Below, piece by piece: positions 12,874-55,249 of a DNA stretch of 64,000 bases. Under the pieces are notes generated by a model. That model was not told the DNA's origin. It worked only from the letters and a program-made list of their open reading frames with translations, and ran no database searches. The position numbers were made by a program, and so were the translations under genes. This DNA comes from Hyphochytrium catenoides (lineage: Eukaryota; Protista; Hyphochytriomycota): the NCBI GenBank assembly GCA_900088475.1, contig FLMG01003999.1:1-64000 (forward strand). The letters are read 5' to 3'. The first letter of the stretch is position 1; every line of letters begins with the position of its first letter.

Positions 12874-14086
12874 ATGCTAGGTAGAAGCATTGCCGTGGTA
12901 CTCTTCGGAGTTGTTGCAGCCTATGTCCTCCACATAATGAATCAGGGCCACTTCTTCGAGAAGGCAGTGCCGTTTAATACTGAGAATTGCCACCTTATGA
13001 AAAAAGGTACGTTCCATCATGACCTACTCAATGTCAAATGTATAGCTTATATGGATTCTACCTGTGTAGGTGCTGATGCGTGTGAGAGCCTAGGGCTTCA
13101 CAAGCCTTCAGGTACCGTCATACTGGCATGCAGCAGCAGAGCAAAGCGCACAAAATGGTGGCCAGCTGTAGCATTCTGGGGCAATGGCAGTGCATATCAT
13201 TTGGAAAACGATGGGTTATTCAAATATGATCCCAAGGTATCCTCCTAGCACCTGCAAGGCTGTTAAATGTGCTTTGGCTTAAGTACCTTGTAACTCACCT
13301 ATTACACTCCGTTCCCTCACCCTTTCACCCTTTCTGTGTCAGAATGATAAGCTTGTAAAGCTTGATATGCAAGGATTGAAGGGCGAGTTCCACGCTCATG
13401 GGATAGGCATCCTAGACGATGGAGATCAGGATGAAGTCACAATCATGGCGGTGAACCACAGGACCCCTGGGTCAGTCATTGAAATCTTTACCCATCGGGT
13501 GGGCACCAACACTGTGAANNNNNNNNNNNNNNNNNNNNNNNNNNNNNNNNNNNNNNNNNNNNNNNNNNNNNNCAACGTTGTTCTGCGAAAGCCTAGTGGC
13601 GAGCTGCAGGTGGTGGCAAAGAATATCAAGTATGCGAACGGAATCACTCTTTCCTCAGGAAGAGACCTGCTATTCGTCGCTTCTTCGACAGCACCCGAGG
13701 TCCTAGTATATGCCAGGAATGAGCGAACTGGATCTCTAACCTACAAGGAAGCTGTTCCTTTGGACTTCATTGTGGACAACTTGTGGACTGAACCTGATAC
13801 TGGAGCTATCTTTGCCACCGGGATGTGGCATGCATTTGACTATCTCTGGTTAGAGATGAACGCAAGTGATCCTTCTCGGGTTGTCGCAAGCAAAGTGGCC
13901 AGAATTGTTAACAACACTGAAGAATCTCGCTTCTTTGGCAAGAACTTTATGGTGGAACCCGTCCTGTTGACCCCTGGCAGCTTCTTTTCGGATGCCGTGA
14001 CCACCGTCTATGACAAAGCAACCAACAAAGCTATTATGGGCAGCATTTATAATGACGGAATTCTAGTTTGCGACAAATTTCTGTAA
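12874..14086 (+). CDS. Paraoxonase/arylesterase (PON-like six-bladed beta-propeller lactonase) with N-terminal signal anchor
   Basis: Hydrophobic N-terminus; motifs GADACES, FHAHGIG, AVNH, YANGI, VDNL. Assembly gap at 13519-13572 lies inside the CDS. Confidence 0.85.
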
Positions 14087-17239: not shown

Positions 17240-18812
17240 CTAGGAAGGGATGTTGACAGTGCCCTTGCACATGGCAAGAAGCTTTGTCAAAATGGCCTCA
17301 CCATCCTCCCAGAGCTACAGTGGAAGAGAAGTGATGAGCTCAGATCCCGAGAGCGTAAGAGGACACCATGGGAGCACTCACCCCGTTGTGCTGGTACTCA
17401 TTGGTTACAAAGACCTTGCAATTGATAGTCTTGGCTAGCTCTAAAGAGAACTCAAGATCGACGTACATGTCCGTGAAGTAGACGGCGGCTGCGCATGGGA
17501 CTTGGGAACTCTTGAGAGTGTCTATATCGTAGAGATGGCCCCAGCTATTGTCGATAGCAACGAGCTCAGCCACAGCCTTTAGCTTGCCTAGCTCGCCGTA
17601 AGCTCCTTCAAACATCCACGGATAGACCATTTCGCCGGTAAAGAAAAGTGGTTGATCTGGATTGCCTAGTCTACCTCCAATTTGAAATTCTGGGAACTCG
17701 GTCTTCACCCGTTCAGCTGACCAGTTGGAAGCGCAACCTTCATTGTAGATGGATTCATGGAGCACGCTGTATATCCTGGTGCGAAGATCGAGTTATTATG
17801 TGGCAAATTTACAGAGATCTTTGGGTACGATAACTTACGGGTTGGTGTCCCACGAAGCCTGGTGAGACTCTATTTTGCGAAGAAAGTGATAGCTCAAGCC
17901 ATCTTCAGACTCCAAAAAAGCGTCCTCCAGGAGATAATGTAGCGCCTCGAAGCCTGATTGACTGCCAAGCATAATCCCTAGCTGCAAAAATCTTTGAGGG
18001 GAGAGAAACCCGCCGCTTGGAAGCTTTACGTTGTTTGACACCAGATACTGCACAATCCTGTCTACCCTCGAGACATCTTCGGGATAGCGGCCATAGAAGT
18101 TCTTGTTGCGCTCTATGACCCTTTTATAGGTGGCTCGATAGACCTCATCAGGGAGCTTTTTGATCGGAGGTAGGCCTCCAGTAAAGAGACCGAACTTGAT
18201 AGAGGAAGGGGCAAGGGAAAGATACGTTGTCAAGCAAAAGCCACCATAGGATTGTCCTAGCACCTGAGATTGTCATTTGGGCAAGGATCAGCCGAAGGAA
18301 AGATTAGCGCCAATTGAATGCTGAAGTCGTACCACCCATTGTCCATCTTTGCCCAACAGTGTTTCGCGAATTACTTCACAGTCCTTGACAATCGATGGGG
18401 CCCTGAAGTTCCTCAGGTATTGCGCTTGCTTCTCCGGTGTACCAAGAAGCAGGAGAGCCGCCGCGGTAATTGGAGTGCTCAAGCCAGTTCCTCTCTGGTC
18501 AAGTAGGATTACTCTGAACTCAGCCAAAGCCCTTTTGATCCAACCTGATGCCGCTACTGGTCGTGGAGAGGCAAAGCCTGGGCCACCTTGTAGGAAAAGG
18601 AGAAAGGGCAAAGATTCTTTCTCTTTTTGGGGATCAACGAGCTCTCGACAAAAGACCCGGATCGTCTTTCCTCCCTGATCGGCACTTTGCGGATGGTCCC
18701 AATCTAGCGGGACATTAAACCAATGCTCCGTCAGAGTCAGACCAGGGATTCGGCTCGTCATGCCGCGCCGGTGTCCCATTGCTCCGCTAGACGATTGCTC
18801 AGCGCCGCGCAT
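17240..18812 (-). CDS. Proline iminopeptidase (prolyl aminopeptidase, S33 alpha/beta hydrolase)
   Basis: FLQGGPG, LLDQRGTGLS, nucleophile motif GQSYGG, FTGEMVYPWMF, AAVYFTDMYV, NEYQHNG. Three introns; start is M at 18812 or 18761. Confidence 0.92.
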
Positions 18813-19327: not shown

Positions 19328-20254
19328 ATGAGCATGGTGTCGGATGAGGCAACGAAGACGCACGTGATGCCCTTGGCGGAGGCTAATGACTCGCTATTAC
19401 GATTTGCCACCTATGAAGATTACCTAGATTCCCATGTCAGCGAGAAGGATATTGCCTATCTGGAGGTCAGACTAGTGGGTCTCTGCACCTTGATGTTATT
19501 ACTACTTAATCTCTTATTGATCTGATAAGCAGGACGAGGATTTAGCTAGGCAACTTGTTGAGCTGGGATTCAGAGGCAGCAGTAAGGCACTCAGTAGGGA
19601 AGAGTTTGACATCCAAAAGAAGGCGGAAATAGAACGACATCAGCCCAAGAAAGATGACCCCAAGCCTTTGGCAAGCGCTGGATGTGATCTTCTGGGCTCA
19701 CCTTTCTATCAGTGCCTTGCAAGTAGAGAGGAGCTAGTGCGAACAGGAAAGCTCAGTGTACGTGACTGGAACTCTCACCCGCCCACAATCACTCGCTGAG
19801 TCTGGCCCTTTAGACTATCATCTTTCTCAGAACTCACAATGCGAAGGGTCAAGAAGTAAGCGGCTATTTAGATTATGGTGCCAGACTGGAGTCAGACCCC
19901 TTTGAGCAATATTTCCAGAAAAAGAAAAGGCTCATGCCACGTCCGAACGATTTGAGCTATTATAACTGGGACTCCCAGACGTCGACATCTAACTCCACGG
20001 AGAACTTTCAGGTACTAGTTGATCCAGAGCACGGTCTATTATTCAAGAGCAAAAAGGACAGAAAGGTTATCAATGTCGACCCGGAGGTACGCCGCAGCAT
20101 AACTAGACAACAATATGCCTTCAAGACGTTGCTAACCCTCGCCACCTTGGATTGATAGGAGGACCCTGGAGACAATACGACTAGATCCGAGATAAAGACT
20201 CAGGAGTATGAACAAGTGGTCATTTACGACCACATGACCCGGAGGAAGGCTTGA
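19328..20254 (+). CDS. CFAP299: Cilia- and flagella-associated protein 299 (C4orf22/DUF4464 family)
   Basis: FATYEDYLDS...YLE|DEDLARQLVELGFRG, GQEVSGYLDYGARL, PRPNDLSYYNW, FKSKKDRKVINVDP, QVVIYDHMTRRK. Four exons. Confidence 0.92.
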
Positions 20255-20306
20255 CTGCAAACAGCTGTATATTTATGTGAAGCATAGGAATAAAGACCAT
20301 GACGAG

Positions 20307-21678
20307 CTATTGAAATGTGAGCTTTGGGCGAGGTGGCGGTGGTGGAGGCGCTTGCGAGTCTCCAGGACCCTTGAAATAAAGCTGAAGCTGTGCCATGAAA
20401 AGGGAAGACGATGATGAATGCCAATGCAGGTCAAGACATCCAAGGAGCTTGTGTGGACCTACCGTGAATAGTCGATTCTCGCGGTCCCAATTTGTGAAGA
20501 ATCTCCCTTCAGACTTATCCACCTCCATGTTTGGCACCTTGAACCCAATTGTCTCATAAGGCTCACATGCGAAAAGCACATACCTGACCACCTGTTAGTC
20601 TACATGATGATGATACGCAGCAATGGATAGTGTACATACTGGAAGTTCTTGTCCGGTGCTTCCACCCGCTGTTCATAGGCCGACATGAAGCGATGCCGTG
20701 GCTGAAATCCCTCATTGACCTCTGGATACTCGATTTGGAACAGAAGGCTTCTCGCTCCTGATTCAGGGTCTCTGGATTTGGTCACCTACGGTTGAAGCTG
20801 TCAGGACACAATCGGAGTGAACCACTGATGTCTCTAAGCGGCAAACCTTGTAGCCTGGACGGCCAATTTTGATAGTCTTTCTCACTTGAACCTTCGGGGC
20901 CCTAGAAGGGATGGGTTAGCAATGTTTCCCTATGAGCTCGGGGTAGTCATAGGATTTCTCTTACAGGCTTGGGGCAATATTTGCTTCCGCAGCTTCCTTC
21001 GCCGCTATAATTTAGGACCAACAGATCATGAGTATCATACTAAGACATCAACGTAACCACCAACGTACCTCGTCTGGCCAGATTTGTTTGATGGCGCTTT
21101 CCTTGGGTATGGGCTAGGTAATTCCCCTCGTTATTGTGGAGAGTTAAGCAGAGCTTGCACTCAAAGGATCCAAGGTGATTTTTCATAAAGTAGGGATCCT
21201 GGATATAACAGCCAGGTCAGATTGCGGATCATCGTAAGGTATGACAGAGAGGTCGTTACCTTGCTTAGGTCAATTGTTTCCATAGCTAGCTTTCTAAGGC
21301 GCTCTCTTCTGTCAATATTTGCCTGCTCTGCAGACATAACGCCTCCTGATCCAGGCTTCGAACCTACTCTATTTTGGAAGTCCATCCCTCCCCTTAACCT
21401 AAGGACAAGATGAAGAGTGCTCTCCTTGCCAATGTCGTACTCATAAAGGGACCGTCTATCCTCGAGCTGCTTTGTTCCGAAAATGAGTCTCTGCTGATCT
21501 AGAGGAATGCCCTCTCTGCTCATGAGCTCCATTTTCACAGAGCTGATTGTGTCAGCTGGGTCAACTTCCAGTGTCGTGGTCCGCTCTGTGGTTCAGAGCA
21601 ATCGGGTTTTAGTACACGGCCAATTGCAAGGTAGCGTGCGAAGGACGTACCATCTATATTTCTGACAAAGATCTGCAT
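20307..21678 (-). CDS. SF3A2: Ubiquitin-SF3A2 fusion: divergent 76-aa ubiquitin in frame with splicing factor 3A subunit 2 (SF3a66/Prp11)
   Basis: Exon 1 (21651-21678) plus 21386-21585 gives 76 codons [18 protein letters not shown]...[13 protein letters not shown]. It is followed directly in the same exon by [15 protein letters not shown]...[17 protein letters not shown]|[43 protein letters not shown] (U1C-type zinc finger), IGRPGYK and [14 protein letters not shown]. Confidence 0.95.
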
Positions 21679-22510
21679 ACTGCTTTACGTGGGCCGCTTT
21701 TTGCCTTGCAAACACACCAGGAAGCTAATGGTTCTGGAGGAAGCTCACGGAAAGCTATTCAGCTAGACACTCGCCAAGTCCTCCGTTGCCCGCACTTGCG
21801 CAACAGACTTTCGTGGCACTTGAACAACCTTCTTCACACTCCGATGCTCATAAATCGGCAGCACTGATGCTCCAGATTTATTCAAGTTGTAGCTATCTAA
21901 TAATGAACGCAAAGCAAAACAGAGGAACCTCGCGGAATCTCCATCTGCAATAGCAATACAACTCTGCCATTGGGGCCTCCAATCTCCTGGGAGGGTTCTG
22001 GCGGTCTGTCATTGAGTTTCTATGTGCAGAGATTCTGGTACAACAACCTTTTTGAGTACTGTACAGAACCTAACAACAACAACTGCGTACGGGGGGGTGT
22101 CGACGGCAGAAGCTCTTGTGGAGTTCTGTAGCCAAAGCTTCAGTGAGAAGAAGGAAAGGAAATCTACAATCTGATCAGCGATCATTGATCAACATCACAG
22201 TCACGGGCAAGCCCAAGGGTCAAATTGTCCTTCTCCAGACTTGCGCGTCCAGTTGAGGTTATTGAGTTGAGATTGAGAGGATTGTAGGAAATCGTACTCA
22301 CAGAGACACATCATGCAGCTGGCCATCCAGTGTGTGGAGTTTGGAGTGTCGAGATAATCAACGGCGGTGCAGGCCACCCCGCTCTTTACTTCATCCGTGC
22401 CTTGCCTATAGTCAAAAGAGTTGCCCCTTTAGCGCTTCCCCTTGCCTTTGAGCTTCACATTCTTTTCTTGGCTTAACATACAAGGCGAAGGGTTAATTCT
22501 ATTTGGTCCA

Positions 22511-24585
22511 ATGGAAGACAAGAAGTGGACTACTGTCATCTGCTGCATGGGCGCTGGGTACGTCGGAGGGCCGACAATGGCTGTCATTGCGTGGAAGTGT
22601 CCCGACGTGAGTCACAAGTTCTATTTATTCAACATAAGCGTCTGGTTCCTAAGCTTGCCCTCTAGATCAAGGTAATTGTAGTGGATCTCAACCAGCGCCA
22701 AATAGGCAGATGGAACGATAGCTCTAATCTTCCGGTCTATGAGCCTGGACTGCGCGAGATAATCGATGAAGTGCGAGGAAGGTGAGTTGACGAATGACAT
22801 GCCCTTGGGTCTCGACGAAGCTGTTGACCGCTACTTGACACTAGAAATATGTTCTTCACTACCGACATCGATGGCTCTATAAAAGAGGCGGACATAGTGT
22901 TTGTCAGCGTTAACACGCCAACAAAGCTTAAAGGTATTGGTAAGGGCGTAGCCGCGAATCTAAAGAACTGCGAGCTCGCCGCGCGTAAGATTGCTGAGGT
23001 AGCAACCACACATAAAATAGTGGTATGTGTCGCGCGCGGAGGCCGTCAAGGACTAGTACTAGTACCAAATCACAATCTGACAGCTGCCTTGTCGCTCCAG
23101 GTTGAGAAGTCAACGGTGCCAGTCCGCACTTCCGAGTCTATCGAAGCTGTGCTCATGGCGAACAGTAAGGGGTTGCAGTTTGACATACTCTCAAATCCAG
23201 AATTCCTGGCGGAAGGTGTGATCATTGCTGTCACTATTTTTGCTAACTTGCTAAAAGTTAGCGACAGGCACGGCGATAAAGGACTTGCTGAACCCAGACC
23301 GGGTACTTATAGGAGGCAAACAGACTCCAAGTGGACAGGCAGCCGTCGAAAAGTTAGCTAACATTTACAGCAGATGGGTACCTAGAGGTACGACCCTGCC
23401 GGTCTTTATGGTACCCACCACTCTAAACGAGAACTGTATACCACTGTTGAGCAGAGAAGGTCATCACGACCAATTTATGGTCTAGTGAGCTCTCCAAGCT
23501 CGTTGCCAATGCCTTTTTGGCGCAGAGAATAAGCAGTATTAATTCAGTCTCCGCCCTTTGTGAGGCCACCAGTGCGGATGTGCAGGAGGTGGCTCGTGCC
23601 ATCGGCGCCGACTCCCGCATAGGTAGTAAGTTCTTGAATGCCGGTGTGGGCTTTGGAGGGTCATGCTTCCAAAAGGTGACTGTTATCTGATATTTGAAAC
23701 CTCTACCCCTTGTAACGAGCCAACGTCTTCCTACCTCACAGGACATTTTAAACCTAGTCTATCTCTGTGAGCAGCACAACTTGGATGAAGTGGCAGATTA
23801 TTGGCGCCAGGTCGTCCTAATGAACGATTACCAGAAGACGCGTTTCGCGGAAGTCATTGTGCAAAAAATGTTCAACACAATTACAGACAAGACGTAAGTG
23901 CAAAGTCTACATCCGTAGTCCAATCTCGACTGGTGCTCAAGACGGACTACATATAGCATTGCCATTATGGGATTCTCCTTCAAGAAGGACACAGGAGACA
24001 CACGTGAGACCCCAGCTGGTCTGGTCATCAAAATTTTACTGGAGGAAGGAGCAATACTGAATATTTATGATCCTAAGGTCAGCTCTTATGCGCCAACAGA
24101 AAACAGGGACTTCCCGCTTCTAACCCTTTGTCCCCTCAGGTCGAGCAGGAAGATCTCATCAGGGAGTTGGAATACCAAGGGATCAATGAATCAGACTATC
24201 CTAACTGGCAGGTAAAGTCCTATTTGTGGTACGACTTGTGGTTGCCGCAACCTGACAAGGACCTGCACTACTTCCTAGAATTCAGTGCACCGTTGTAAAG
24301 ATCCGTATGCGGCCGCGGAGGGTGCACACGCCATTGTAGTTTTGACAGAGTGGGATGAGTTCAAGTCTCTCAACTACCGCAAGATTTATCAATCCATGGT
24401 GAAGCCTGTAAGTTTGACGATGTAGCTCTCTCAGACGTCCATAATCCTTCGGTAACTTTACCTGTACGGGGTAGGCTTTTGCCTTTGATGGCCGACTCAT
24501 CCTTTCGCGGCAAGAGATGGAGGCATGCGGATTCAGCTTCTTTGCCATCGGCAAGCCGGGAAATAAGCCTTTGAAGATCAGGTAA
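22511..24585 (+). CDS. UGDH: UDP-glucose 6-dehydrogenase
   Basis: [84 protein letters not shown]. About 10 short introns, all reconstructable. Confidence 0.97.
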
Positions 24586-33345: not shown

Positions 33346-35049
33346 ATGGGTTCTACCGTACATGCAGGCAGATGGAAAGTTCTCCTACTTATAACACTAT
33401 GGAGTGTCTTCGCCTTGGAGCCAGAGGCGAAGGATCCTTCCCTATCCAATAACTTTAGCCGAAGGCAGCTAAGCCAGGTGTACACAGGGGTTCAACAGGT
33501 CGAATGCGGCAATCTCGGAAGGCTAGTAGATTACATGTTCCAACACTTCTTTGACCGTCCGTCACCCTGTCGTCAGAGCGAACCTCCTACTAGTACTAGT
33601 CCTACACCAAGCCCTCCAGTTCCTACGCCAAGCCCTCCAGTTGTGGCGTCATCTAATGGCGATTCGGGGTATGATAATCTGCCAGATGGTAGCCCTGCTC
33701 CTCCACTTGGCTCGCCGCCAGCCACGCGGAAACCCAACCCGGATTCTACCGCTCCTCAAGCCCCCGCGACGCCTACACCTCAACCTGGAATACCAATACT
33801 CTCTCCTTCTCCTGCAAATAGCCCTCCCAATGTCCCCACACCAGCTCCAGCAAGCTTCGCGCCAACTCCGGCAGTGACTGTGGCTCCGTCAGCCCCTGCA
33901 CCCACACAACCTCCTACTCCAGCACCCAGTCCCCAGCCAACTCCTTCACAGCCTCCGCCGACGGTAGACCCATCGCGTGTTGATTCTGTTCGGAACTGCA
34001 AGCAAGGAGTTCGCCAGCGGAAGGAGTACAGGGAGCTCTCTTCAGCCGAGTGGGATTCGTTTAAGGCCGCGGTCATGAGGCTGCTCAAGGTTCCCTCGCA
34101 GAGAGGGCACAACTCCTTATACGAGGAGTTCTGTCACGACCACTTCAACTATCGAGAAGACTCGCATAGTGGGTCTCAGTTCTTACCGTGGCATCGCCTC
34201 TTCCTGGCAAGGTTTGAGTCGGCCCTTCAGTCAGTTGACCCCAACGTGGTGTTGCCTTATTGGGACTGGACGAAGGATCTCCCTGATCCTCTTAATATTC
34301 CGCTCCTCAAGGATGACAAGTATTTGCATCTGGGGAACGACTGCCCCATTAAAGTGAACAGCCCGTACGCATCCTTTGGTCCCAATCACTGCGTCTTCAG
34401 AGAGCCCGGCACACGAAACACTACGTGGTACGCACCCTGGAGAATTGACTCGCTAATTAAGACGGAGAGACGGTTCTGGAAGTTCTCTGAGGTGGTGGAA
34501 TTAACCATTCACAATGTGGCTCACGTCCAGGTTGGAGGAGATATGTATTATAAGAGTAGCTCGGCCTGCGATCCTCTCTTCTTTCTCCATCACGCGCAGG
34601 TGGATAGGCTCTGGTACTTGTGGCAAGCCCGGGAGGGAAATATGAACAGCTATGATGGTGAGCACTTCCATGGCACCGAGAAGCAGATGACTGTTGCCCC
34701 CTCGGACATTCTCATGCCATTTGATGTATCGGTGGCCAGTTCTCTCGATACTGCAAAGCTCTGCTATACTTACGGTTCTCCATCTTCGTCGGTGTCTTTC
34801 TCGTTAGTTGCGGAACACACGGAGCAGGAAGATACCTTTCAAGGTATTGACGAGGACTGGGTCAAGGAAATGGGAATGAGTATTGAAAAAGTGCGAGAAG
34901 CAGAAGCCTTTATGCTAGCGCTCACGCCGCCCAAATTAGAGAACAATAAGGCGTCTTCAGGATCACGGGCTTCGAGGTCTGTCGAGGGCATTACGTGTCT
35001 GGTAGCGCTGCTCAGCTGGTTGTTGACTTGGGGAACATTGTCTGCTTGA
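33346..35049 (+). CDS. Secreted, probably GPI-anchored tyrosinase (type-3 copper) with Pro/Thr-rich stalk; intronless
   Basis: Signal-like N-terminus; P/T/S-rich region; RKEYRELS; CuA CHDH...SHSGSQFLPWHR; LPYWDW; CuB HNVAHVQVGGDM...DPLFFLHHAQVDRLW; C-terminal small-residue site followed by a hydrophobic tail. Confidence 0.93.
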   Translation: MGSTVHAGRWKVLLLITLWSVFALEPEAKDPSLSNNFSRRQLSQVYTGVQQVECGNLGRLVDYMFQHFFDRPSPCRQSEPPTSTSPTPSPPVPTPSPPVVASSNGDSGYDNLPDGSPAPPLGSPPATRKPNPDSTAPQAPATPTPQPGIPILSPSPANSPPNVPTPAPASFAPTPAVTVAPSAPAPTQPPTPAPSPQPTPSQPPPTVDPSRVDSVRNCKQGVRQRKEYRELSSAEWDSFKAAVMRLLKVPSQRGHNSLYEEFCHDHFNYREDSHSGSQFLPWHRLFLARFESALQSVDPNVVLPYWDWTKDLPDPLNIPLLKDDKYLHLGNDCPIKVNSPYASFGPNHCVFREPGTRNTTWYAPWRIDSLIKTERRFWKFSEVVELTIHNVAHVQVGGDMYYKSSSACDPLFFLHHAQVDRLWYLWQAREGNMNSYDGEHFHGTEKQMTVAPSDILMPFDVSVASSLDTAKLCYTYGSPSSSVSFSLVAEHTEQEDTFQGIDEDWVKEMGMSIEKVREAEAFMLALTPPKLENNKASSGSRASRSVEGITCLVALLSWLLTWGTLSA

Positions 35050-42057: not shown

Positions 42058-42717
42058 ATGGGGACATGCCAGTCCCAGCTGGAGGCTGTGAAGATCTTCC
42101 CGGCTGATAGCAATGGCGAGCTTTCAGCAAACTATGTGCCTACGTCTAAAGTCAAAGGTGGATATAAGGTCCTCGTCTCTGGACTTGCCTCTTGCGGAAA
42201 GACAAGTCTTATCTTAGCGATGGTTGCGTTTTTGGCCGAAGGGAAGCCAAGAGGAGATCAGGAAGGGAGGACGTTAGTGGTCCCAACGCCTCGGCCGTCA
42301 GAAGCAGTTCGATTTAGCAAACTGACTTATAGAGGAGCAACTTTATATGTAGGAGACCTCCCGGGCAGCATGCATCTCAGAAGAACGTGGTATAAGGACG
42401 AGGTGCTCAATGACACACGGCTCATCGTGCACTTAATAGACTCTCAAGATGAGGCGAAGCTAACGCTGTCTCTAGTAGAGCTCGAGAGGTTATGTGCAGT
42501 GTGCAAAGACAGAACGAAGCGCTTCAACTTGCTCATTGTCGCCACTAAGCAGGATGCACGGCACCCTATGGACCAGCTCTGTATCAAGGATCGCATTCAC
42601 GAGGCCGGCTTCAACCCTATGGTACCTTGGGATATCTTCCGCTGCTCAGTAAAAAGCGGGGAAGACTTGCTTCACATCTTGCAGTGGATAATGAACAGCA
42701 TCACTGGCAAGTTATAG
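42058..42717 (+). CDS. Divergent ARF-like (ARL) small GTPase; intronless
   Basis: N-terminal MGTCQS; G1 GLASCGKTS; G3 DLPGS followed by LRRTW; IVHLIDS; G4 TKQD; G5 CSV; Arf-type C-terminus ILQWI. Confidence 0.85.
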   Translation: MGTCQSQLEAVKIFPADSNGELSANYVPTSKVKGGYKVLVSGLASCGKTSLILAMVAFLAEGKPRGDQEGRTLVVPTPRPSEAVRFSKLTYRGATLYVGDLPGSMHLRRTWYKDEVLNDTRLIVHLIDSQDEAKLTLSLVELERLCAVCKDRTKRFNLLIVATKQDARHPMDQLCIKDRIHEAGFNPMVPWDIFRCSVKSGEDLLHILQWIMNSITGKL

Positions 42718-51566: not shown

Positions 51567-52469
51567 CTACTCGGTCAAAAGCGGTCCTAGATGCTCCAGA
51601 AGGATGGCTTTGTAGGACGCCGTCGCAACGTCATCTGGATTCTGCTTCAATCGCAGATCGCATACTTGCAGCTCTGACTCTATTTTTGCTCTTTTGTTCG
51701 TGGACCTTGAGAGCTCCTTACGTGGAACCGCAGATGTTGCTGCCTTCCCTTCATCTCTCTCAGCCTGACCTTGTCGAGGTTGCAGCAGGCTGGGGGCCTC
51801 AAACAAGCTGCCTACAAATGGTTCTGGACCCAAGTCAGCCATAAAGCCCTCAAAGTCCGGCGGTATACCAAAAAATGCGCTTGAGTAATCAACCTCTTCC
51901 GTCACCGGCGGAGCGGTCTCTAATTTTCTCTTTTTGGAAGCCCCGTTTACGTCCAGAAGGGATTCAGTGGTTGTTGAGGCCGAAGGTGTAGCGCCTCCTC
52001 CAGATGTCATCAACTGTGACAGGCTTGTAAGAGACTGAGTTAGCTCCGCAACCTGCGTTTTCAGCGCCTCCACATCGCTTCGAAGCCTTTCCATTTCACT
52101 CTTGTCATCGTCGCTATAAGTCTTCCGTTTAATCTTGGAGAGAAGTTCCCGCTTTCCTCTTTGGAAGTACTCGTGCTTGAACTCCCACCATCCTGTTTCC
52201 TGCGTTTGATCCAGCTTGCCGCTGCTCAAGGTCCCAGTTTCGTCAGTCCGAAGCTTATGGAAACCATAGAAGTTCAGCTGTCTGACAAAGGAGCTAAACT
52301 TGCTGTGGCGGAAAAACTTAGGCAGCACAGTCTCTGAGAACTCCTTGGGTCTCTTGACAATGAAGGTTCTCCCGTCCTTCGTCCAGTCAACAATACCATC
52401 TGTCTCGGGAGCAGAGATGAGCTTGAAGGTTTTCTCTAGAAACGCTGAGACTACGCGACCACTAGGCAT
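51567..52469 (-). CDS. Heat-shock-factor-type transcription factor; intronless
   Basis: FLEKTFKLI...IVDWTKDGRTFIVK...VLPKFFRHSKFSSFVRQLNFYGFHK...WEFKHEYFQRG, followed by a short coiled coil. First ATG at 52469. Confidence 0.95.
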   Translation of the reverse strand: MPSGRVVSAFLEKTFKLISAPETDGIVDWTKDGRTFIVKRPKEFSETVLPKFFRHSKFSSFVRQLNFYGFHKLRTDETGTLSSGKLDQTQETGWWEFKHEYFQRGKRELLSKIKRKTYSDDDKSEMERLRSDVEALKTQVAELTQSLTSLSQLMTSGGGATPSASTTTESLLDVNGASKKRKLETAPPVTEEVDYSSAFFGIPPDFEGFMADLGPEPFVGSLFEAPSLLQPRQGQAERDEGKAATSAVPRKELSRSTNKRAKIESELQVCDLRLKQNPDDVATASYKAILLEHLGPLLTE

Positions 52470-55249
52470 CTTTTTGGTATCCGTCGGTCCAACAAGATTC
52501 GAAGTGGCGCCTTTAGCCTGTTGGGCTTGGCCTGTAAAGACTAGAAATGATAAAGGCGCAGACACGCGCAGATTGGGTGTCTTGCAGATGAAGGGTTGAG
52601 ATAGACGATTCAGCAGCAGAGACCAACTGTTCGCATACTCAACCTGGCTAGAGTTTGTGCTCTAAAGTCAGAGATGGACCCGCATCATCAAAAACCACTC
52701 TCTTCCACGCATCGACCGAGGAGATTGGCAATAACAAGTCTTCCTTTCGAGTTCTTGCAGCCATCAGCAACCTTGGCAACAAGGTGATGACGGTCGGAAG
52801 CTGGATAAACAAACCCCTTGACCGACCTGGCCTGGAGCCTGGAGGGATGATTGTTCTCCTGCTTGCTGTGGCAATGATCAGCCTCATCATCATAGATACG
52901 TCACTTGCTTCCCCTGCTCTCTATAAGGACAGCAGCGCCATCACTCTGCCGCTTTAGGGGTTCTCCACTCCAAAAGCGATTACCCTAGGGTTGTGATTCC
53001 CACATGTTCAGTCTTATTCTGAGATGCAGTATTTCATAGAGATATTTCGACCGGTAGCTACAGCTCTTTGATGACGTTAATCGGGGCACACCCATTAGGG
53101 CGAGTATATCTGGACAGGTAGACGTGGATGCGTCTATACCGGGGTGGGTAGGACCCACCCATCCTGGCTTGCTGGTCATGACAAGGTTATGGAAACCGAG
53201 TAAACCTTACTCAGGAGGGTCGGTCGGCACTGCTGGTGAGGTGTAAGCTAGAGTTAAACACGGGAAAGCCCTTACACTAACTTGATGGGGCGGGCGAATG
53301 CGTAGCTTTCCTACCTGCCCTTTTGGTGATGAGAGCAAGGGAGCGAAAGGGAAAATGTCGACATAGAGGGCTACGGAGTCCTCCATCCTCCTTCCAGCAC
53401 ACAGCAGAGCCACACGGAAAGATCTCAAGAAGCTAGGATGATTGTCAAGCTCCCTTCTTGATATTGAGAGAGGAGAGGCCTATGATGGAAACTGCAGGAG
53501 CGATGGAGCGATGCGGCGCAGCTTGTTGTTGGAGGTCCATCAGGCAGATTCACAGTAGAAAGAGGCTACTATCTATCTTCCACCAACAAGCATGGACGAC
53601 TAAAGGACGTTTTCATTCTTCTTCCCACATTAGTTCTAGCTCTCTTTGCGCGTTTATCCTTTACTAACTACTACTCCTATTTGATGTAGAACTAGCTGCG
53701 TGGATGGGTGTGACTCATCTTGAGTGCATGCTGTACTGAGACAAAAGTCCTTTAGCGGTGGCAAGAAGAAGGGGAACCACTAGAAGAAACAAAGTAGGGA
53801 GTAAACTACCCTTATTTTTTAGTAGTTCATTAGTAACGATCACATCCTGCTGCTGATAGTTCGTTCTTGTCCCCTCATTCATCCATGACCATTCTCAATT
53901 AGGGCCTTCGAAACGTCATGCGGACCGTATATTTATTTGCTTATTACAACTAGCTATCCTACTACACTACATATAACGGCGACTCAGAAGACGACGACGG
54001 ACCTACTACGAATCATAAAAGAGTGCGAACAATCCTCCATCTTCATTTTTATTTATCTTCTTGTTACAATAATGATACGCCGCCGCTCGTCGACTGACAC
54101 CACCAGCAGCAGCAGCTCTCCTTAAAAGACGAAGATCTGCTGCTGTGTTTAAAAGCTGGCTGCAAACTACCGCAGCAGTTGCTATTGTAGTGTTAACACA
54201 ACCGAACGAGAGCAGCCATAACAACATCATATCACTGTCGCCTTTTTTCTCTGCTGCTTGGTTTGAGGAGGAGGTACTTTTTTCTACTACTTTTCTCCCT
54301 TTGTTGGCGCTAGGTAGTAACAACCCATGATGCCCTAGTACTATAGGAGGAGGAACGCCGGGACGCAGCGAGCAACTCCCACATCATGCCGGGAGCTGAT
54401 AATACGTCTTGGCTTTATTTACGTCTTTGTTTCTTCACTCGGCCTACATCTCTATTCCCATAAACTCCTCGTCGTGCACTTGCTGTTATAGAGTTGAATT
54501 CTTTTGTTTTTGCTGCGTCGTGGCTTCCAGCAGACTACTTCTACTCCGAAAAATCTTACAACAACATCAATCTTCGTCAAAATTGTTGTAGCAAATGATG
54601 ATGCTTCACCGAGTAATCACCGAGCTATAATCCTAGCCCTATGCTAAACATCTCTAGTCTTTGCGCAAAATCTATAGTATTTATGAGGTAAGTGAAGGTC
54701 ACAGTTGGTTATTAGAGGACGCAAAACGCTTTATTTCAATGCAAAGGCACTAATGTTATGATGGGAGGATTGACAACAACAGTAGTCGTCGCCGTCATCA
54801 TCATCCTGATCATTGGTGCACTCTATACTCCTTCACCGCGTGCTCTTCGGAGGATCGTCTAGAGTCCATCACATCCACCACTAAAACAGCAGGCCAGCAG
54901 CGCCAGCTGACGGGAGAGATGGAGGAAGAAGGAAGGCAACAAGTGAGGAGCTACACCAGGCTAGTCATCATTATTCATCATCATCAATTATCATGGCAAG
55001 AGTTAGTAGGTAAAAGGCCCAGCGGCTAGGCGGTACCGGCTAGCGGTTTAGTTCTTCCTTCAGTATCACTCAGTACTACAACTGTACTACGGACTACGAA
55101 CGCACGGGAAATGTTCAGACGTCTTTTACTGCGAACTTCTGGTTTGGTTGTCCGCTTCACCTCTCTTCTAGGTCGCTAGAAACCGATACTTCTTCTGGGC
55201 AAAAAGAAGCAGCACATGATGCTGCTGCTGCTGCTCACGGTGATCAGAA

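What the first reader, a model, noticed from the sequence alone, without database searches (positions are those of the whole stretch)
20307..21678. Spliceosomal SF3A2 encoded as a ubiquitin-fusion precursor with an intact LRLRGG|M junction
Seen: an exactly 76-codon ubiquitin (28 nt + 200 nt, with a 65-nt intron at 21586-21650) runs without stop or intron into the native SF3A2 start MDFQNRVG at 21385. The junction is inside one exon, so it is not a gene-model merge. Known: the canonical ubiquitin fusions are eL40 and eS31; some algae have extra partners; Sde2 is a splicing factor activated by cleavage of a ubiquitin-fold leader; SF3A2/Prp11 normally has no ubiquitin leader. Inference: deubiquitinase cleavage releases native SF3A2, so U2 snRNP assembly may be coupled to a ubiquitin leader (folding or expression aid, or protease-gated activation). 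I know of no description of this fusion, but could not search.
Basis: partly seen in the sequence, partly recalled or inferred. Interest (0 to 1): 0.8.

Follow-up and report, generated by a model that had tools for sequence, protein, structure and literature searches.

The report
Ubiquitin-like leader on splicing factor SF3A2
This gene makes the core splicing protein SF3A2 with a ubiquitin-like leader that is probably cut off to free its working end; the same arrangement is common in brown algae, water moulds and their relatives, and I found no paper describing it.

Summary
On the minus strand, 8 exons (21678-20307) encode a 308-aa protein. It consists of a 76-residue ubiquitin-fold leader ending LRLRGG, joined with no linker and inside exon 2 to a complete SF3A2/Prp11.

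Two corrections are needed. First, the leader is not canonical ubiquitin: it is 64-66% identical, and 4 of the 7 lysines are replaced. Second, the fusion is not peculiar to this genome. Of 282 SF3A2 homologues fetched, 104 carry such a leader, and all the named ones are stramenopiles: brown algae, xanthophytes, chrysophytes, a pelagophyte, Saprolegnia, Albugo and Lagenidium.

The leaders are 23-97% identical to ubiquitin. Even so, 101 of 105 (window included) end in GG directly before residue 1 of SF3A2. That residue is Ile, Met, Val or Leu, never Pro.

In published Bact spliceosome structures, residues 3 and 10 of Prp11/SF3A2 sit in the catalytic centre, so a globular leader fused at residue 1 should have to come off.

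Best reading: a precursor cleaved by a deubiquitinase, working like Sde2 or Ub-eL40/eS31. Cleavage is inferred, not shown. Eight literature searches found no description. I rate it a new variant of a known kind, of moderate to high interest.

The parts
21651..21678 (-). Exon 1: start codon and leader codons 1-9 plus the first base of codon 10 (MQIFVRNID).
   Evidence: An in-frame TAA lies at 21687-21685, three codons upstream.
21586..21650 (-). Intron 1, 65 nt, GTACGT...CACAG, phase 1, inside the leader.
   Evidence: Removing it restores a 76-codon ubiquitin-family reading frame.
21386..21585 (-). Leader part of exon 2: ubiquitin-like residues 10-76, ending LRLRGG (G75-G76 = 21391-21386).
   Evidence: Pfam PF00240, E=2e-19. 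The alignment to ubiquitin shows 64-66% identity.
21383..21391 (-). Junction GGA GGG | ATG: the predicted deubiquitinase cleavage site between G76 and M77, with no linker.
   Evidence: Read directly from the sequence. 101 of 105 fusion homologues end in GG at this exact position, and the next residue is I, M, V or L, never P.
21356..21385 (-). First ten residues of mature SF3A2 ([10 protein letters not shown]). F3 and K10 correspond to Prp11 Tyr3 and Lys10.
   Evidence: In Bact structures, Prp11 Tyr3 stacks on the 5' splice site and Lys10 occupies the K1 site (PMC12773743; PMC5835773). Among the fusions, position 3 is F in 96 of 105 and position 10 is K in 103 of 105.
21260..21385 (-). SF3A2 part of exon 2 (residues 1-42 of mature SF3A2).
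   Evidence: Up to 88% identical to the N-termini of other SF3A2 proteins.
21069..21198 (-). Exon 3: matrin-type C2H2 zinc finger.
   Evidence: Pfam zf-met PF12874, E=2.6e-8.
20965..21004 (-). Exon 4 (linker helix).
   Evidence: Gene model. It aligns with homologues without a frame break.
20847..20901 (-). Exon 5.
   Evidence: Gene model; tblastn match to P0152.
20640..20785 (-). Exon 6: first half of the SF3A2 domain.
   Evidence: Pfam PF16835, E=3.7e-14, profile positions 8-55.
20463..20583 (-). Exon 7: second half of the SF3A2 domain.
   Evidence: Pfam PF16835, E=3.1e-13, profile positions 58-96.
20307..20387 (-). Exon 8: short proline-rich C-terminus and the TAG stop.
   Evidence: Gene model.

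Best explanation
The locus is a real gene for a precursor of the U2 snRNP protein SF3A2/Prp11. The protein is translated with a 76-residue ubiquitin-fold leader.

Proposed mechanism:
1. One mRNA is translated from the leader's ATG.
2. During or soon after translation, a cellular deubiquitinase of the USP/UCH type cuts after Gly76. It recognises a leader that keeps ubiquitin's LRLRGG tail and the Ile44-patch residues (I8 in place of L8, then I44, H68, V70).
3. This releases SF3A2 with exactly the N-terminus it has in organisms without the leader ([10 protein letters not shown]...).
4. Only this free, flexible N-terminal peptide can later reach into the activated (Bact) spliceosome. There, residue 3 stacks on the 5' splice site and Lys10 sits in the K1 metal site.

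The leader is therefore a removable pro-domain. It most likely helps production and masks or gates the N-terminal peptide. It also determines which residue is exposed at the N-terminus. In about 80% of relatives that residue is Ile, which cannot be a start codon and is a destabilising N-terminal residue.

Shown here: the fusion itself, its fold, its conservation, purifying selection on a relative's leader, and the junction rules. Inferred: cleavage, the enzyme, the timing and the purpose of the leader.
For: - Anatomy and domains.
- The fusion recurs in 104 of 282 SF3A2 homologues from independent genomes, metagenome contigs and transcriptomes.
- Among them are single uninterrupted ORFs on genomic contigs: L001 and L008-L010.
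- Complete transcriptome ORFs that start at the leader's Met are also present: the MMETSP entries P0287, P0289, P0296, P0297, P0298 and P0383.
- Junction rules: GG in 101 of 105; no linker; next residue I 84, M 17, V 2, L 2, never P. In the 42-sequence alignment G76 is invariant while the rest of the leader is barely conserved.
- Leaders that Pfam does not recognise are still ubiquitin homologues (hhalign probability 98.3%, E=1e-14).
- The Saprolegnia leader, about 30% identical to ubiquitin, is modelled as a ubiquitin fold at pLDDT 93-98. It is followed by a low-confidence junction and N-terminal peptide. Its best structural matches after SF3A2 itself are ubiquitin chains, with TM 0.88-0.95.
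- The leader of one pair of relatives is under purifying selection. pN/pS is 0.21 with pS saturated, against 0.08 for the SF3A2 body.
- Canonical-ubiquitin leaders (P0376, P0379) nest among diverged-leader relatives. Any cleavable ubiquitin fold therefore seems to serve. A real ubiquitin fused to a non-proline residue is known to be cut (established knowledge: the ubiquitin-fusion technique).
- Lineages without the leader start at Met in the same position.
- The N-terminus of Prp11/SF3a66 lies in the Bact catalytic centre (PMC5835773; PMC12773743).
- Precedents: the Sde2 UBL is cut at GG-K by Ubp5/Ubp15 or USP5, and Fubi is cut by USP16/USP36 (PMC9508853; PMC13572447).
Against: - There are no transcript, proteomic or biochemical data for this organism or any relative, so cleavage has never been observed.
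- The junction residue here is Met, so a shorter product from a downstream transcription start cannot be excluded. Leaky scanning is unlikely, because four other ATGs precede it.
- Very diverged leaders, such as the pelagophyte type, are not recognisably ubiquitin by sequence and gave only a low-confidence model. General deubiquitinases might not cut those.
- Three UBL-like leaders break the GG-abutting rule: P0332 ends in AG, P0430 has three extra residues after GG, and P0322 ends in GG but is proline-rich and not visibly ubiquitin-like.
- The single-gene trees that place the window are only moderately supported.
Confidence: 0.7

Rival explanations
1. The ubiquitin-like domain is not cleaved. 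It stays as a permanent N-terminal domain of SF3A2 and acts as an interaction module. That would resemble the uncleaved C-terminal ubiquitin-like domain of SF3A1, which binds U1 snRNA stem-loop 4, or non-covalent Hub1 binding.
For: - SF3a already carries one uncleaved UBL, on SF3A1 (papers listed).
- Many leaders are so diverged that ordinary deubiquitinases might not recognise them (23-45% identity to ubiquitin; no significant profile match for the pelagophyte type).
- The leader is under purifying selection in its own right.
Against: - A permanent domain has no need for an invariant GG, a zero-length linker, or the avoidance of Pro at the next residue, all held over this much divergence.
- Residues 3 and 10 after the junction work inside the catalytic centre, where a globular domain two residues away would clash.
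- Some lineages carry near-canonical ubiquitin as the leader. Cells cut such fusions (established knowledge).
- Lineages that lost the leader kept the same N-terminus.
Confidence: 0.13
2. The leader is the real product. On this view the gene is an extra source of ubiquitin or of a variant ubiquitin-like modifier that rides on a housekeeping gene, as in Ub-eL40 and Ub-eS31, and SF3A2 gains nothing from it.
For: - The window's leader keeps K27, K48, K63, R42, R54, R72 and the LRLRGG tail. Once released it could in principle be activated and conjugated.
- Three relatives carry near-canonical ubiquitin leaders.
Against: - Across the family the leader ranges from 23% to 97% identity to ubiquitin, whereas ubiquitin itself is almost invariant.
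- The window's leader has 27 substitutions, including 4 of the 7 lysines.
- The leader evolves about 2.7 times faster than the SF3A2 body at non-synonymous sites.
- What is conserved is the GG and the fold, not the ubiquitin surface.
Confidence: 0.07
3. In this particular organism the leader exon is not part of the functional SF3A2 mRNA. Either transcription starts downstream and translation begins at the junction Met, or the juxtaposition is an assembly artefact.
For: - The junction residue here is Met, unlike about 80% of relatives, so an internal start is formally possible.
- No RNA data for this genome were available.
Against: - The leader and SF3A2 share one exon and one frame.
- The leader keeps an intact 76-codon frame across a correctly phased intron, with a strong Pfam match.
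- The same junction occurs in more than 100 independent sequences, including transcriptomes.
- Four other ATGs lie between the first ATG and the junction ATG.
- Misassembly exactly at a codon boundary that reproduces a family-wide junction is not credible.
Confidence: 0.04

Closest known systems
Ubiquitin-ribosomal protein fusions Ub-eL40 (UBA52/Ubi1,2) and Ub-eS31 (RPS27A/Ubi3)
   Same: They have a single N-terminal ubiquitin-fold unit of 76 residues whose GG directly abuts residue 1 of a subunit of a large RNA-protein machine. The leader is removed by deubiquitinases and aids production of the partner (PMC6721733 and PMC5027506, listed).
   Different: Their leader is canonical ubiquitin and feeds the ubiquitin pool. 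They are universal in eukaryotes and their partners are ribosomal. Here the leader is diverged (64-66% identity in the window, down to 23% in relatives), the named carriers are all stramenopiles, and the partner is spliceosomal.
[quoted passage not shown]
   Same: It is a splicing factor translated as an inactive precursor with an N-terminal UBL ending in GG. Deubiquitinases (Ubp5/Ubp15; USP5 in humans) release the active part, which then enters the spliceosome. The exposed N-terminal residue matters, and it is an N-end-rule substrate. Ubiquitin can replace the UBL (PMC9508853; PMC13572447).
   Different: It is an unrelated partner protein. The exposed residue is an invariant Lys, where here it is Met or Ile. 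Sde2 is an accessory, intron-specific factor, whereas SF3A2 is a core U2 snRNP subunit. The window protein has no Sde2 domains.
FUBI-eS30 (FAU)
   Same: It has a diverged ubiquitin-like leader (about 36-38% similar to ubiquitin) fused through GG to its partner, and it is removed by ubiquitin-family proteases USP16/USP36 (cited in PMC13572447). This shows that diverged leaders can still be processed.
   Different: The partner is ribosomal and the fusion is an animal one.
Lineage-specific ubiquitin fusions of algae (Ub-actin, Ub-P1, Ub-HMG box, Ub-NiSOD, Ub-membrane protein)
   Same: These are protist nuclear genes with an N-terminal ubiquitin fused to a non-ribosomal partner, often missed by automatic annotation (Sibbald et al. 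2019, PMC6332867).
   Different: SF3A2 is not among the partners that paper reports. It contains no occurrence of splicing, SF3, spliceosome, zinc finger, matrin or Prp11. Those fusions are patchy, whereas this one spans most sampled stramenopile groups.
C-terminal ubiquitin-like domain of SF3A1
   Same: It is a ubiquitin fold within the same SF3a complex.
   Different: It is C-terminal and uncleaved, and it binds RNA through an RGG tail (PMC8833184, listed). It is not a leader.

Membership tests
SF3A2 / Prp11 (U2 snRNP SF3a subunit 2) | Matrin-type C2H2 zinc finger | tested here: met
   Pfam zf-met PF12874, E=2.6e-8, on exon 3.
SF3A2 / Prp11 (U2 snRNP SF3a subunit 2) | SF3A2 beta-sandwich domain (PF16835) | tested here: met
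   Exons 6 and 7 cover profile positions 8-96 of 96, E=3.7e-14 and 3.1e-13. The Saprolegnia fusion protein P0307, a homologue of the window protein, when modelled with AlphaFold2, finds SF3A2 chains of human and yeast spliceosome structures as its best matches.
SF3A2 / Prp11 (U2 snRNP SF3a subunit 2) | Conserved N-terminal peptide with an aromatic residue at position 3 and Lys at position 10 | tested here: met
   The peptide is [10 protein letters not shown]. F3 and K10 match Prp11 Tyr3 and Lys10.
SF3A2 / Prp11 (U2 snRNP SF3a subunit 2) | Assembles with SF3A1 and SF3A3 into U2 snRNP | not testable with these tools
   Needs biochemistry.
Natural N-terminal ubiquitin-fusion precursors (Ub-X) | N-terminal ubiquitin-family domain of about 76 residues | tested here: met
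   PF00240, E=2e-19. The leader is 76 codons long.
Natural N-terminal ubiquitin-fusion precursors (Ub-X) | C-terminal Gly-Gly directly abutting residue 1 of the partner, with the next residue not Pro | tested here: met
   The junction reads LRLRGG|M. The same rule holds in 101 of 105 family members.
Natural N-terminal ubiquitin-fusion precursors (Ub-X) | The ubiquitin moiety is the cell's canonical ubiquitin | tested here: not met
   49-50 of 76 residues are identical, with 27 substitutions. It behaves as a ubiquitin-like leader, not as a ubiquitin gene.
Natural N-terminal ubiquitin-fusion precursors (Ub-X) | Cleaved in vivo by deubiquitinases | not testable with these tools
   Inferred only from the junction rules and from structural constraints.
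Sde2 family | N-terminal UBL ending in GG followed by an invariant Lys (GG-K), plus the Sde2 C-terminal domain | tested here: not met
   The residue after GG is Met, and the only Pfam families found are ubiquitin, zf-met and SF3A2. The gene works like Sde2 but is not a member.
Stramenopile UBL-SF3A2 fusion group (unnamed; defined here) | A 59-134 aa leader ending in GG immediately before [I/M/V/L]-D-[F/Y/M]-Q of a full SF3A2 | tested here: met
   The window fits the pattern shared by 100 GG-abutting homologues. It groups with oomycete-type sequences in SF3A2 trees, with support 98/88 and 83 SH-aLRT.

The most novel reading that the evidence does not exclude
Across stramenopiles, a core spliceosomal protein whose N-terminal peptide plugs the catalytic centre is made as a protease-gated pro-protein. 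The ubiquitin-fold leader keeps that peptide masked until a deubiquitinase removes it. The leader also lets the cell choose the exposed first residue: a free, non-acetylated N-terminus, which is Ile in most lineages. Unassembled SF3A2 would then be removed by the N-degron pathway. This would be a second, independently evolved 'ubiquitin-fold-activated' splicing factor after Sde2, this time acting on a constitutive U2 snRNP subunit.
Probability: 0.3. Interest if true: 0.75.

Novelty: new variant of a known kind. Interest (0 to 1): 0.6.

Why it matters
Natural ubiquitin-fusion precursors are few. The textbook list is the two ribosomal proteins eL40 and eS31, plus FUBI-eS30 and a handful of algal oddities. 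Sde2 is the only splicing factor known to be activated by removal of a ubiquitin fold.

This gene points to another case, and it sits on a constitutive U2 snRNP subunit. It has been conserved across a major eukaryotic lineage that includes brown algae, chrysophytes and oomycete pathogens.

There is a ready structural rationale: the first ten residues of SF3A2 work inside the spliceosome's catalytic centre.

The family also offers a natural experiment. Leaders range from near-canonical ubiquitin to unrecognisable sequence, yet they keep the GG, and there are repeated losses. This variation can be used to ask what a ubiquitin leader is for: folding aid, gating, or control of the N-terminal residue and protein half-life.

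It also shows that database entries labelled only 'Matrin-type domain-containing protein' or 'hypothetical protein' hide a conserved architecture.

Tried and rejected
- **Representative-library search.** The single search, run with exon 2 (collected), was swamped by polyubiquitins. All 150 listed hits were multi-repeat ubiquitins, so it said nothing about fusions. A junction-free query should have been used.
- **Length filter.** The search for homologous proteins filters by length, so it could not reach 308-aa proteins from any single exon. I worked around this in three steps: the SF3A2 N-terminus alone, then a 239-aa non-fused homologue, then a profile of 42 fusions.
- **Naming the source organism.** Exact look-up of four window ORFs found nothing. 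No window-encoded protein appeared in the hit lists, and no hit was more than 77% identical in the SF3A2 part. Placement rests on single-gene trees only.
- **Pelagophyte-type leaders** (P0151, P0271, P0272, P0277). The profile comparison with ubiquitin was not significant, and the AlphaFold2 model was low-confidence (pLDDT 57). Whether these keep the fold is unresolved. I ran no structure search on that model.
- **dN/dS.** Synonymous sites were saturated in the pair used (pS 0.77-0.80), so I report only pN/pS.
- **Whole-window scans.** Rfam and tRNA scans found nothing.
- **Explanations considered and rejected.** Gene-model merge or misassembly is ruled out by the single exon and the family-wide junction. 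A missed leader in the 'non-fused' oomycete models is ruled out because in-frame stops lie upstream of the start in Aphanomyces and Phytophthora.
- **Not done.** I did not submit the spliced 308-aa protein to any tool, because it has no reference and long sequences are not to be typed. All searches used exon references or stored homologues.
Full report
**1. The observation**

I read 20000-22300 on the minus strand and rebuilt the gene in a script.
- The ATG is at 21678.
- Exon 1 is 28 nt.
- The intron is 65 nt, GT..AG, at 21650-21586.
- Then come 200 nt of exon 2 ending GGA GGG (21391-21386), followed at once, in frame and in the same exon, by ATG GAC TTC CAA AAT AGA (MDFQNR, from 21385).

Six further GT..AG introns of 56-75 nt complete a 927-nt CDS of 308 codons, with the stop at 20309-20307. 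An in-frame TAA lies three codons upstream of the first ATG.

I scanned the exons separately by reference against Pfam.

| Exon | Pfam family | E-value |
|---|---|---|
| 2 | ubiquitin PF00240 | 2e-19 |
| 3 | zf-met PF12874 | 2.6e-8 |
| 6 | SF3A2 PF16835 | 3.7e-14 |
| 7 | SF3A2 PF16835 | 3.1e-13 |

The window holds only one ubiquitin-like and one SF3A2 locus.

One correction is needed. The leader is not ubiquitin in sequence. It shares 49-50 of 76 residues with ubiquitin. There are 27 substitutions, among them K6R, L8I, K11R, K29E and K33R. The core motif DQQRLIF and the whole stretch K63-G76 are unchanged. Q2, F4, T12, I36, I44, H68, V70, R42, R54, R72, K27, K48 and K63 are all kept.

**2. What it is: a member of a large, unnamed family**

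My first attempt, the single representative-library search with exon 2, was wasted. Polyubiquitins filled all 150 rows.

I then searched with the SF3A2 N-terminus alone. The closest hit, P0151, proved to be a genomic ORF (L001). In it a 95-residue, barely ubiquitin-like leader ends in LRLVGG and runs straight into [12 protein letters not shown].

Next I searched with a non-fused 239-aa homologue, and then with a profile of 42 fusions (alignment A1). Together these fetched 282 SF3A2 homologues.

Of these, 104 have an N-terminal leader of at least 55 residues, with a median of 78. Forty-two of them carry a precomputed PF00240 hit.

All the named carriers are stramenopiles:
- Brown algae: Ectocarpus, Choristocarpus, Discosporangium, Hapterophycus.
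- Xanthophytes: Tribonema, Heterococcus.
- Other ochrophytes: Phaeothamnion, Chrysoparadoxa, Fibrocapsa, Mallomonas, an ochromonad, and the pelagophyte Chrysophaeum.
- Oomycetes: Saprolegnia diclina, Thraustotheca, Albugo laibachii, Lagenidium, Pythium insidiosum.

Several are complete transcriptome ORFs that start at the leader's Met (MMETSP entries), so relatives transcribe the fusion as one message. P0295 is one uninterrupted 939-nt ORF on three metagenome or assembly contigs.

Animals, fungi, a haptophyte and a dinoflagellate in the same hit lists lack the leader. So do some stramenopiles. For Aphanomyces euteiches and Phytophthora ramorum I checked the DNA. In-frame stops lie upstream of the start, there is no GG, and translation starts at the Met that corresponds to residue 77 here.

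In SF3A2 trees the window groups with the oomycete sequences and two unnamed fusions. Support is 98/88 and 83 SH-aLRT. No sequence is more than 77% identical to it, so I could not name the organism. On the 192-row tree, fused rows fill the stramenopile part. At least 11 gains or losses are needed.

**3. The junction rules**

Counting the 105 leader-bearing sequences, window included:
- 101 end in GG exactly at the junction.
- Two of the four exceptions (P0275, P0328) are non-ubiquitin-like extensions, probably gene-model artefacts. One has AG (P0332) and one has GG plus three residues (P0430).
- The next residue is Ile in 84, Met in 17, Val in 2 and Leu in 2. It is never Pro.
- Position 3 is Phe in 96 and position 10 is Lys in 103.

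In alignment A1, G76 is invariant and G75 is at least 90% conserved, while almost nothing else in the leader reaches 50%.

Leader identity to ubiquitin runs from 23% to 97%. The window's leader is the fourth most ubiquitin-like.

Chrysophyte-type leaders that Pfam misses still match ubiquitin over their full length by profile comparison (probability 98.3%, E=1e-14).

I modelled the Saprolegnia precursor with AlphaFold2, using A1 as its alignment.
- It has a ubiquitin-topology leader at pLDDT 93-98.
- It has a low-confidence junction and first ~17 SF3A2 residues.
- It has a confident zinc-finger helix region and beta-sandwich.

Foldseek returns SF3A2 chains of human and yeast spliceosomes first. 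Ubiquitin itself comes next, at TM 0.88-0.95 and rmsd 0.9-2.3 Å.

For one close pair with DNA in hand (L006 and L007), pN/pS is 0.21 for the leader and 0.08 for the SF3A2 body, with synonymous sites saturated. The leader is therefore constrained, though it evolves about 2.7 times faster than the body.

Two sequences with near-canonical ubiquitin leaders (P0376, P0379) nest among relatives with roughly 30%-identity leaders. Leaders can therefore be replaced or converted by real ubiquitin. This may also explain why the window's leader is so much more ubiquitin-like than those of its nearest neighbours (28-33% identity to it).

**4. How it most likely works**

Two papers place the extreme N-terminus of Prp11/SF3a66 in the catalytic centre of the activated spliceosome.
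- In yeast Bact structures, Tyr3 stacks on the 5' splice site and Lys10 occupies the K1 metal site (PMC12773743).

The window's mature sequence, [10 protein letters not shown], has Phe3 and Lys10. A 76-residue globular domain attached with no linker to residue 1 is hard to reconcile with that role.

That constraint agrees with the comparative evidence: the GG and zero-linker rules, the absence of Pro, the interchangeability with real ubiquitin, and the retention of the same N-terminus after leader loss. It also fits precedent:
- Sde2 is cut at GG-K by Ubp5/Ubp15 and by USP5.
- Fubi is cut by USP16/USP36.
- Ubiquitin can replace the Sde2 UBL (PMC9508853; PMC13572447).

The best explanation is a precursor cleaved after Gly76 by a deubiquitinase. 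The window's leader keeps every surface that such enzymes are known to read: the LRLRGG tail and the Ile44 and Ile36 patches (that these are the recognition surfaces is established knowledge).

What the leader is for is less certain. The candidates are not exclusive:
- A production aid, as for eL40/eS31 (PMC6721733, listed).
- Masking of the active-site peptide until processing.
- Control of the N-terminal residue. Cleavage yields a free N-terminus and bypasses the co-translational NatB acetylation expected for Met-Asp. In about 80% of lineages it exposes Ile, a type-2 destabilising residue of the Arg/N-degron pathway. Both points are established knowledge, not tested here.

Shown here: the anatomy, fold, conservation, constraint and junction rules. 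Inferred: cleavage, the enzyme and the purpose.

**5. Rivals**

- **Permanent, uncleaved domain.** This is the main alternative (about 0.13). It does not explain the GG, zero-linker and no-Pro rules, or the active-site constraint.
- **Ubiquitin supply.** The divergence of the leaders argues against it (about 0.07).
- **Unused leader or artefact in this organism.** This is unlikely (about 0.04) given the single exon, the intact phased intron and the family-wide junction. Four other ATGs also lie before the junction Met. The Met does leave a formal possibility of an internal start, and no RNA data were available.

**6. Comparison with what is known, and novelty**

It works like Ub-eL40/eS31, FUBI-eS30 and above all Sde2. 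It is not a member of the Sde2 family, because it has no GG-K and no Sde2 domain. It is also not a canonical ubiquitin gene.

It is a member of SF3A2/Prp11, with all sequence-level features met.

The algal ubiquitin-fusion survey (PMC6332867) lists actin, P1, HMG-box, NiSOD, membrane-protein and RING partners. It contains no mention of splicing or SF3.

Eight full-text searches found no paper describing a ubiquitin or UBL leader on SF3A2. The library lacks most subscription-journal papers, so this is absence of evidence only.

The architecture has been visible in public databases for years under generic names. One example is the Albugo laibachii entry 'Splicing factor 3A subunit putative'.

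**Verdict**

The feature is real and conserved, and I found no paper describing it. I class it as a new variant of a known kind, the cleavable ubiquitin-fold leader. It is not unique to this genome. Interest: 0.6.

Noticed in passing
window 22442-24000 (+): A UDP-glucose 6-dehydrogenase gene lies head-to-head with the SF3A2 gene, about 760 nt from its start codon. It has several exons, a [11 protein letters not shown]-binding motif, and a Pfam UDPG_MGDP_dh_N hit (E=1e-19). The two genes probably share a bidirectional promoter region.
   Followed up: partly
window 33346-35049 (+); 51567-52565 (-); 42058-42717 (+); 17340-18812 (-); 13367-14086 (+): The other long ORFs in the window are these. 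There is a tyrosinase-domain protein (E=1e-35) and an HSF-type DNA-binding protein (E=8e-33). There is an Arf-family GTPase (E=1e-18). There is an alpha/beta-hydrolase with only a borderline Pfam hit, just below the curated cut-off, whose GGPG motif resembles prolyl aminopeptidase. There is also a weak arylesterase / SMP-30-like ORF. None of four long ORFs is in the protein collection by exact sequence.
   Followed up: partly
window 1-64000: There are no tRNA genes and no Rfam family at gathering threshold anywhere in the 64 kb. GC is even at 45-52%.
   Followed up: yes
L001 6765-7821 (Logan SRR22824304): A relative's SF3A2 gene has a 95-residue leader that is no longer recognisable as ubiquitin by Pfam or profile comparison. 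It still ends in LRLVGG directly before IDFQ, so the GG outlasts the recognisable ubiquitin sequence. The gene has a single intron. A sister sample (L002, SRR22824305) holds a closely related SF3A2 without any leader.
   Followed up: partly
P0376, P0379, P0355 (metatranscriptome or assembly proteins): Three fusions carry near-canonical ubiquitin (92-97% identity) as the leader, followed by Ile. P0376 and P0379 nest among relatives whose leaders are about 30% identical to ubiquitin. This suggests the leader was replaced by, or gene-converted from, a true ubiquitin gene.
   Followed up: partly
L003 2700-3060 (Aphanomyces euteiches); L005 2700-3060 (Phytophthora ramorum): These oomycetes truly lack the leader, with in-frame stops upstream and no GG. 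Saprolegnia, Thraustotheca, Albugo, Lagenidium and Pythium insidiosum have it. The leader has therefore been lost repeatedly within oomycetes. In Phytophthora ramorum an RXLR-family gene sits just upstream of SF3A2.
   Followed up: yes
P0430, P0332, P0322: These are exceptions to the junction pattern. P0430 has GG followed by three extra residues (SRG) before MDMQ. P0332 ends in AG instead of GG. P0322 has a proline-rich 64-residue leader that ends in GG but is not visibly ubiquitin-like. They could be natural tests of whether cleavage is needed.
   Followed up: no
P0427 and P0174 (EukProt 'Colp12' transcriptome): The same transcriptome sample yields one fused SF3A2 that groups with ochromonad sequences and one non-fused SF3A2 that groups near animal sequences. 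The fused one may come from prey or a contaminant rather than from the named organism.
   Followed up: no
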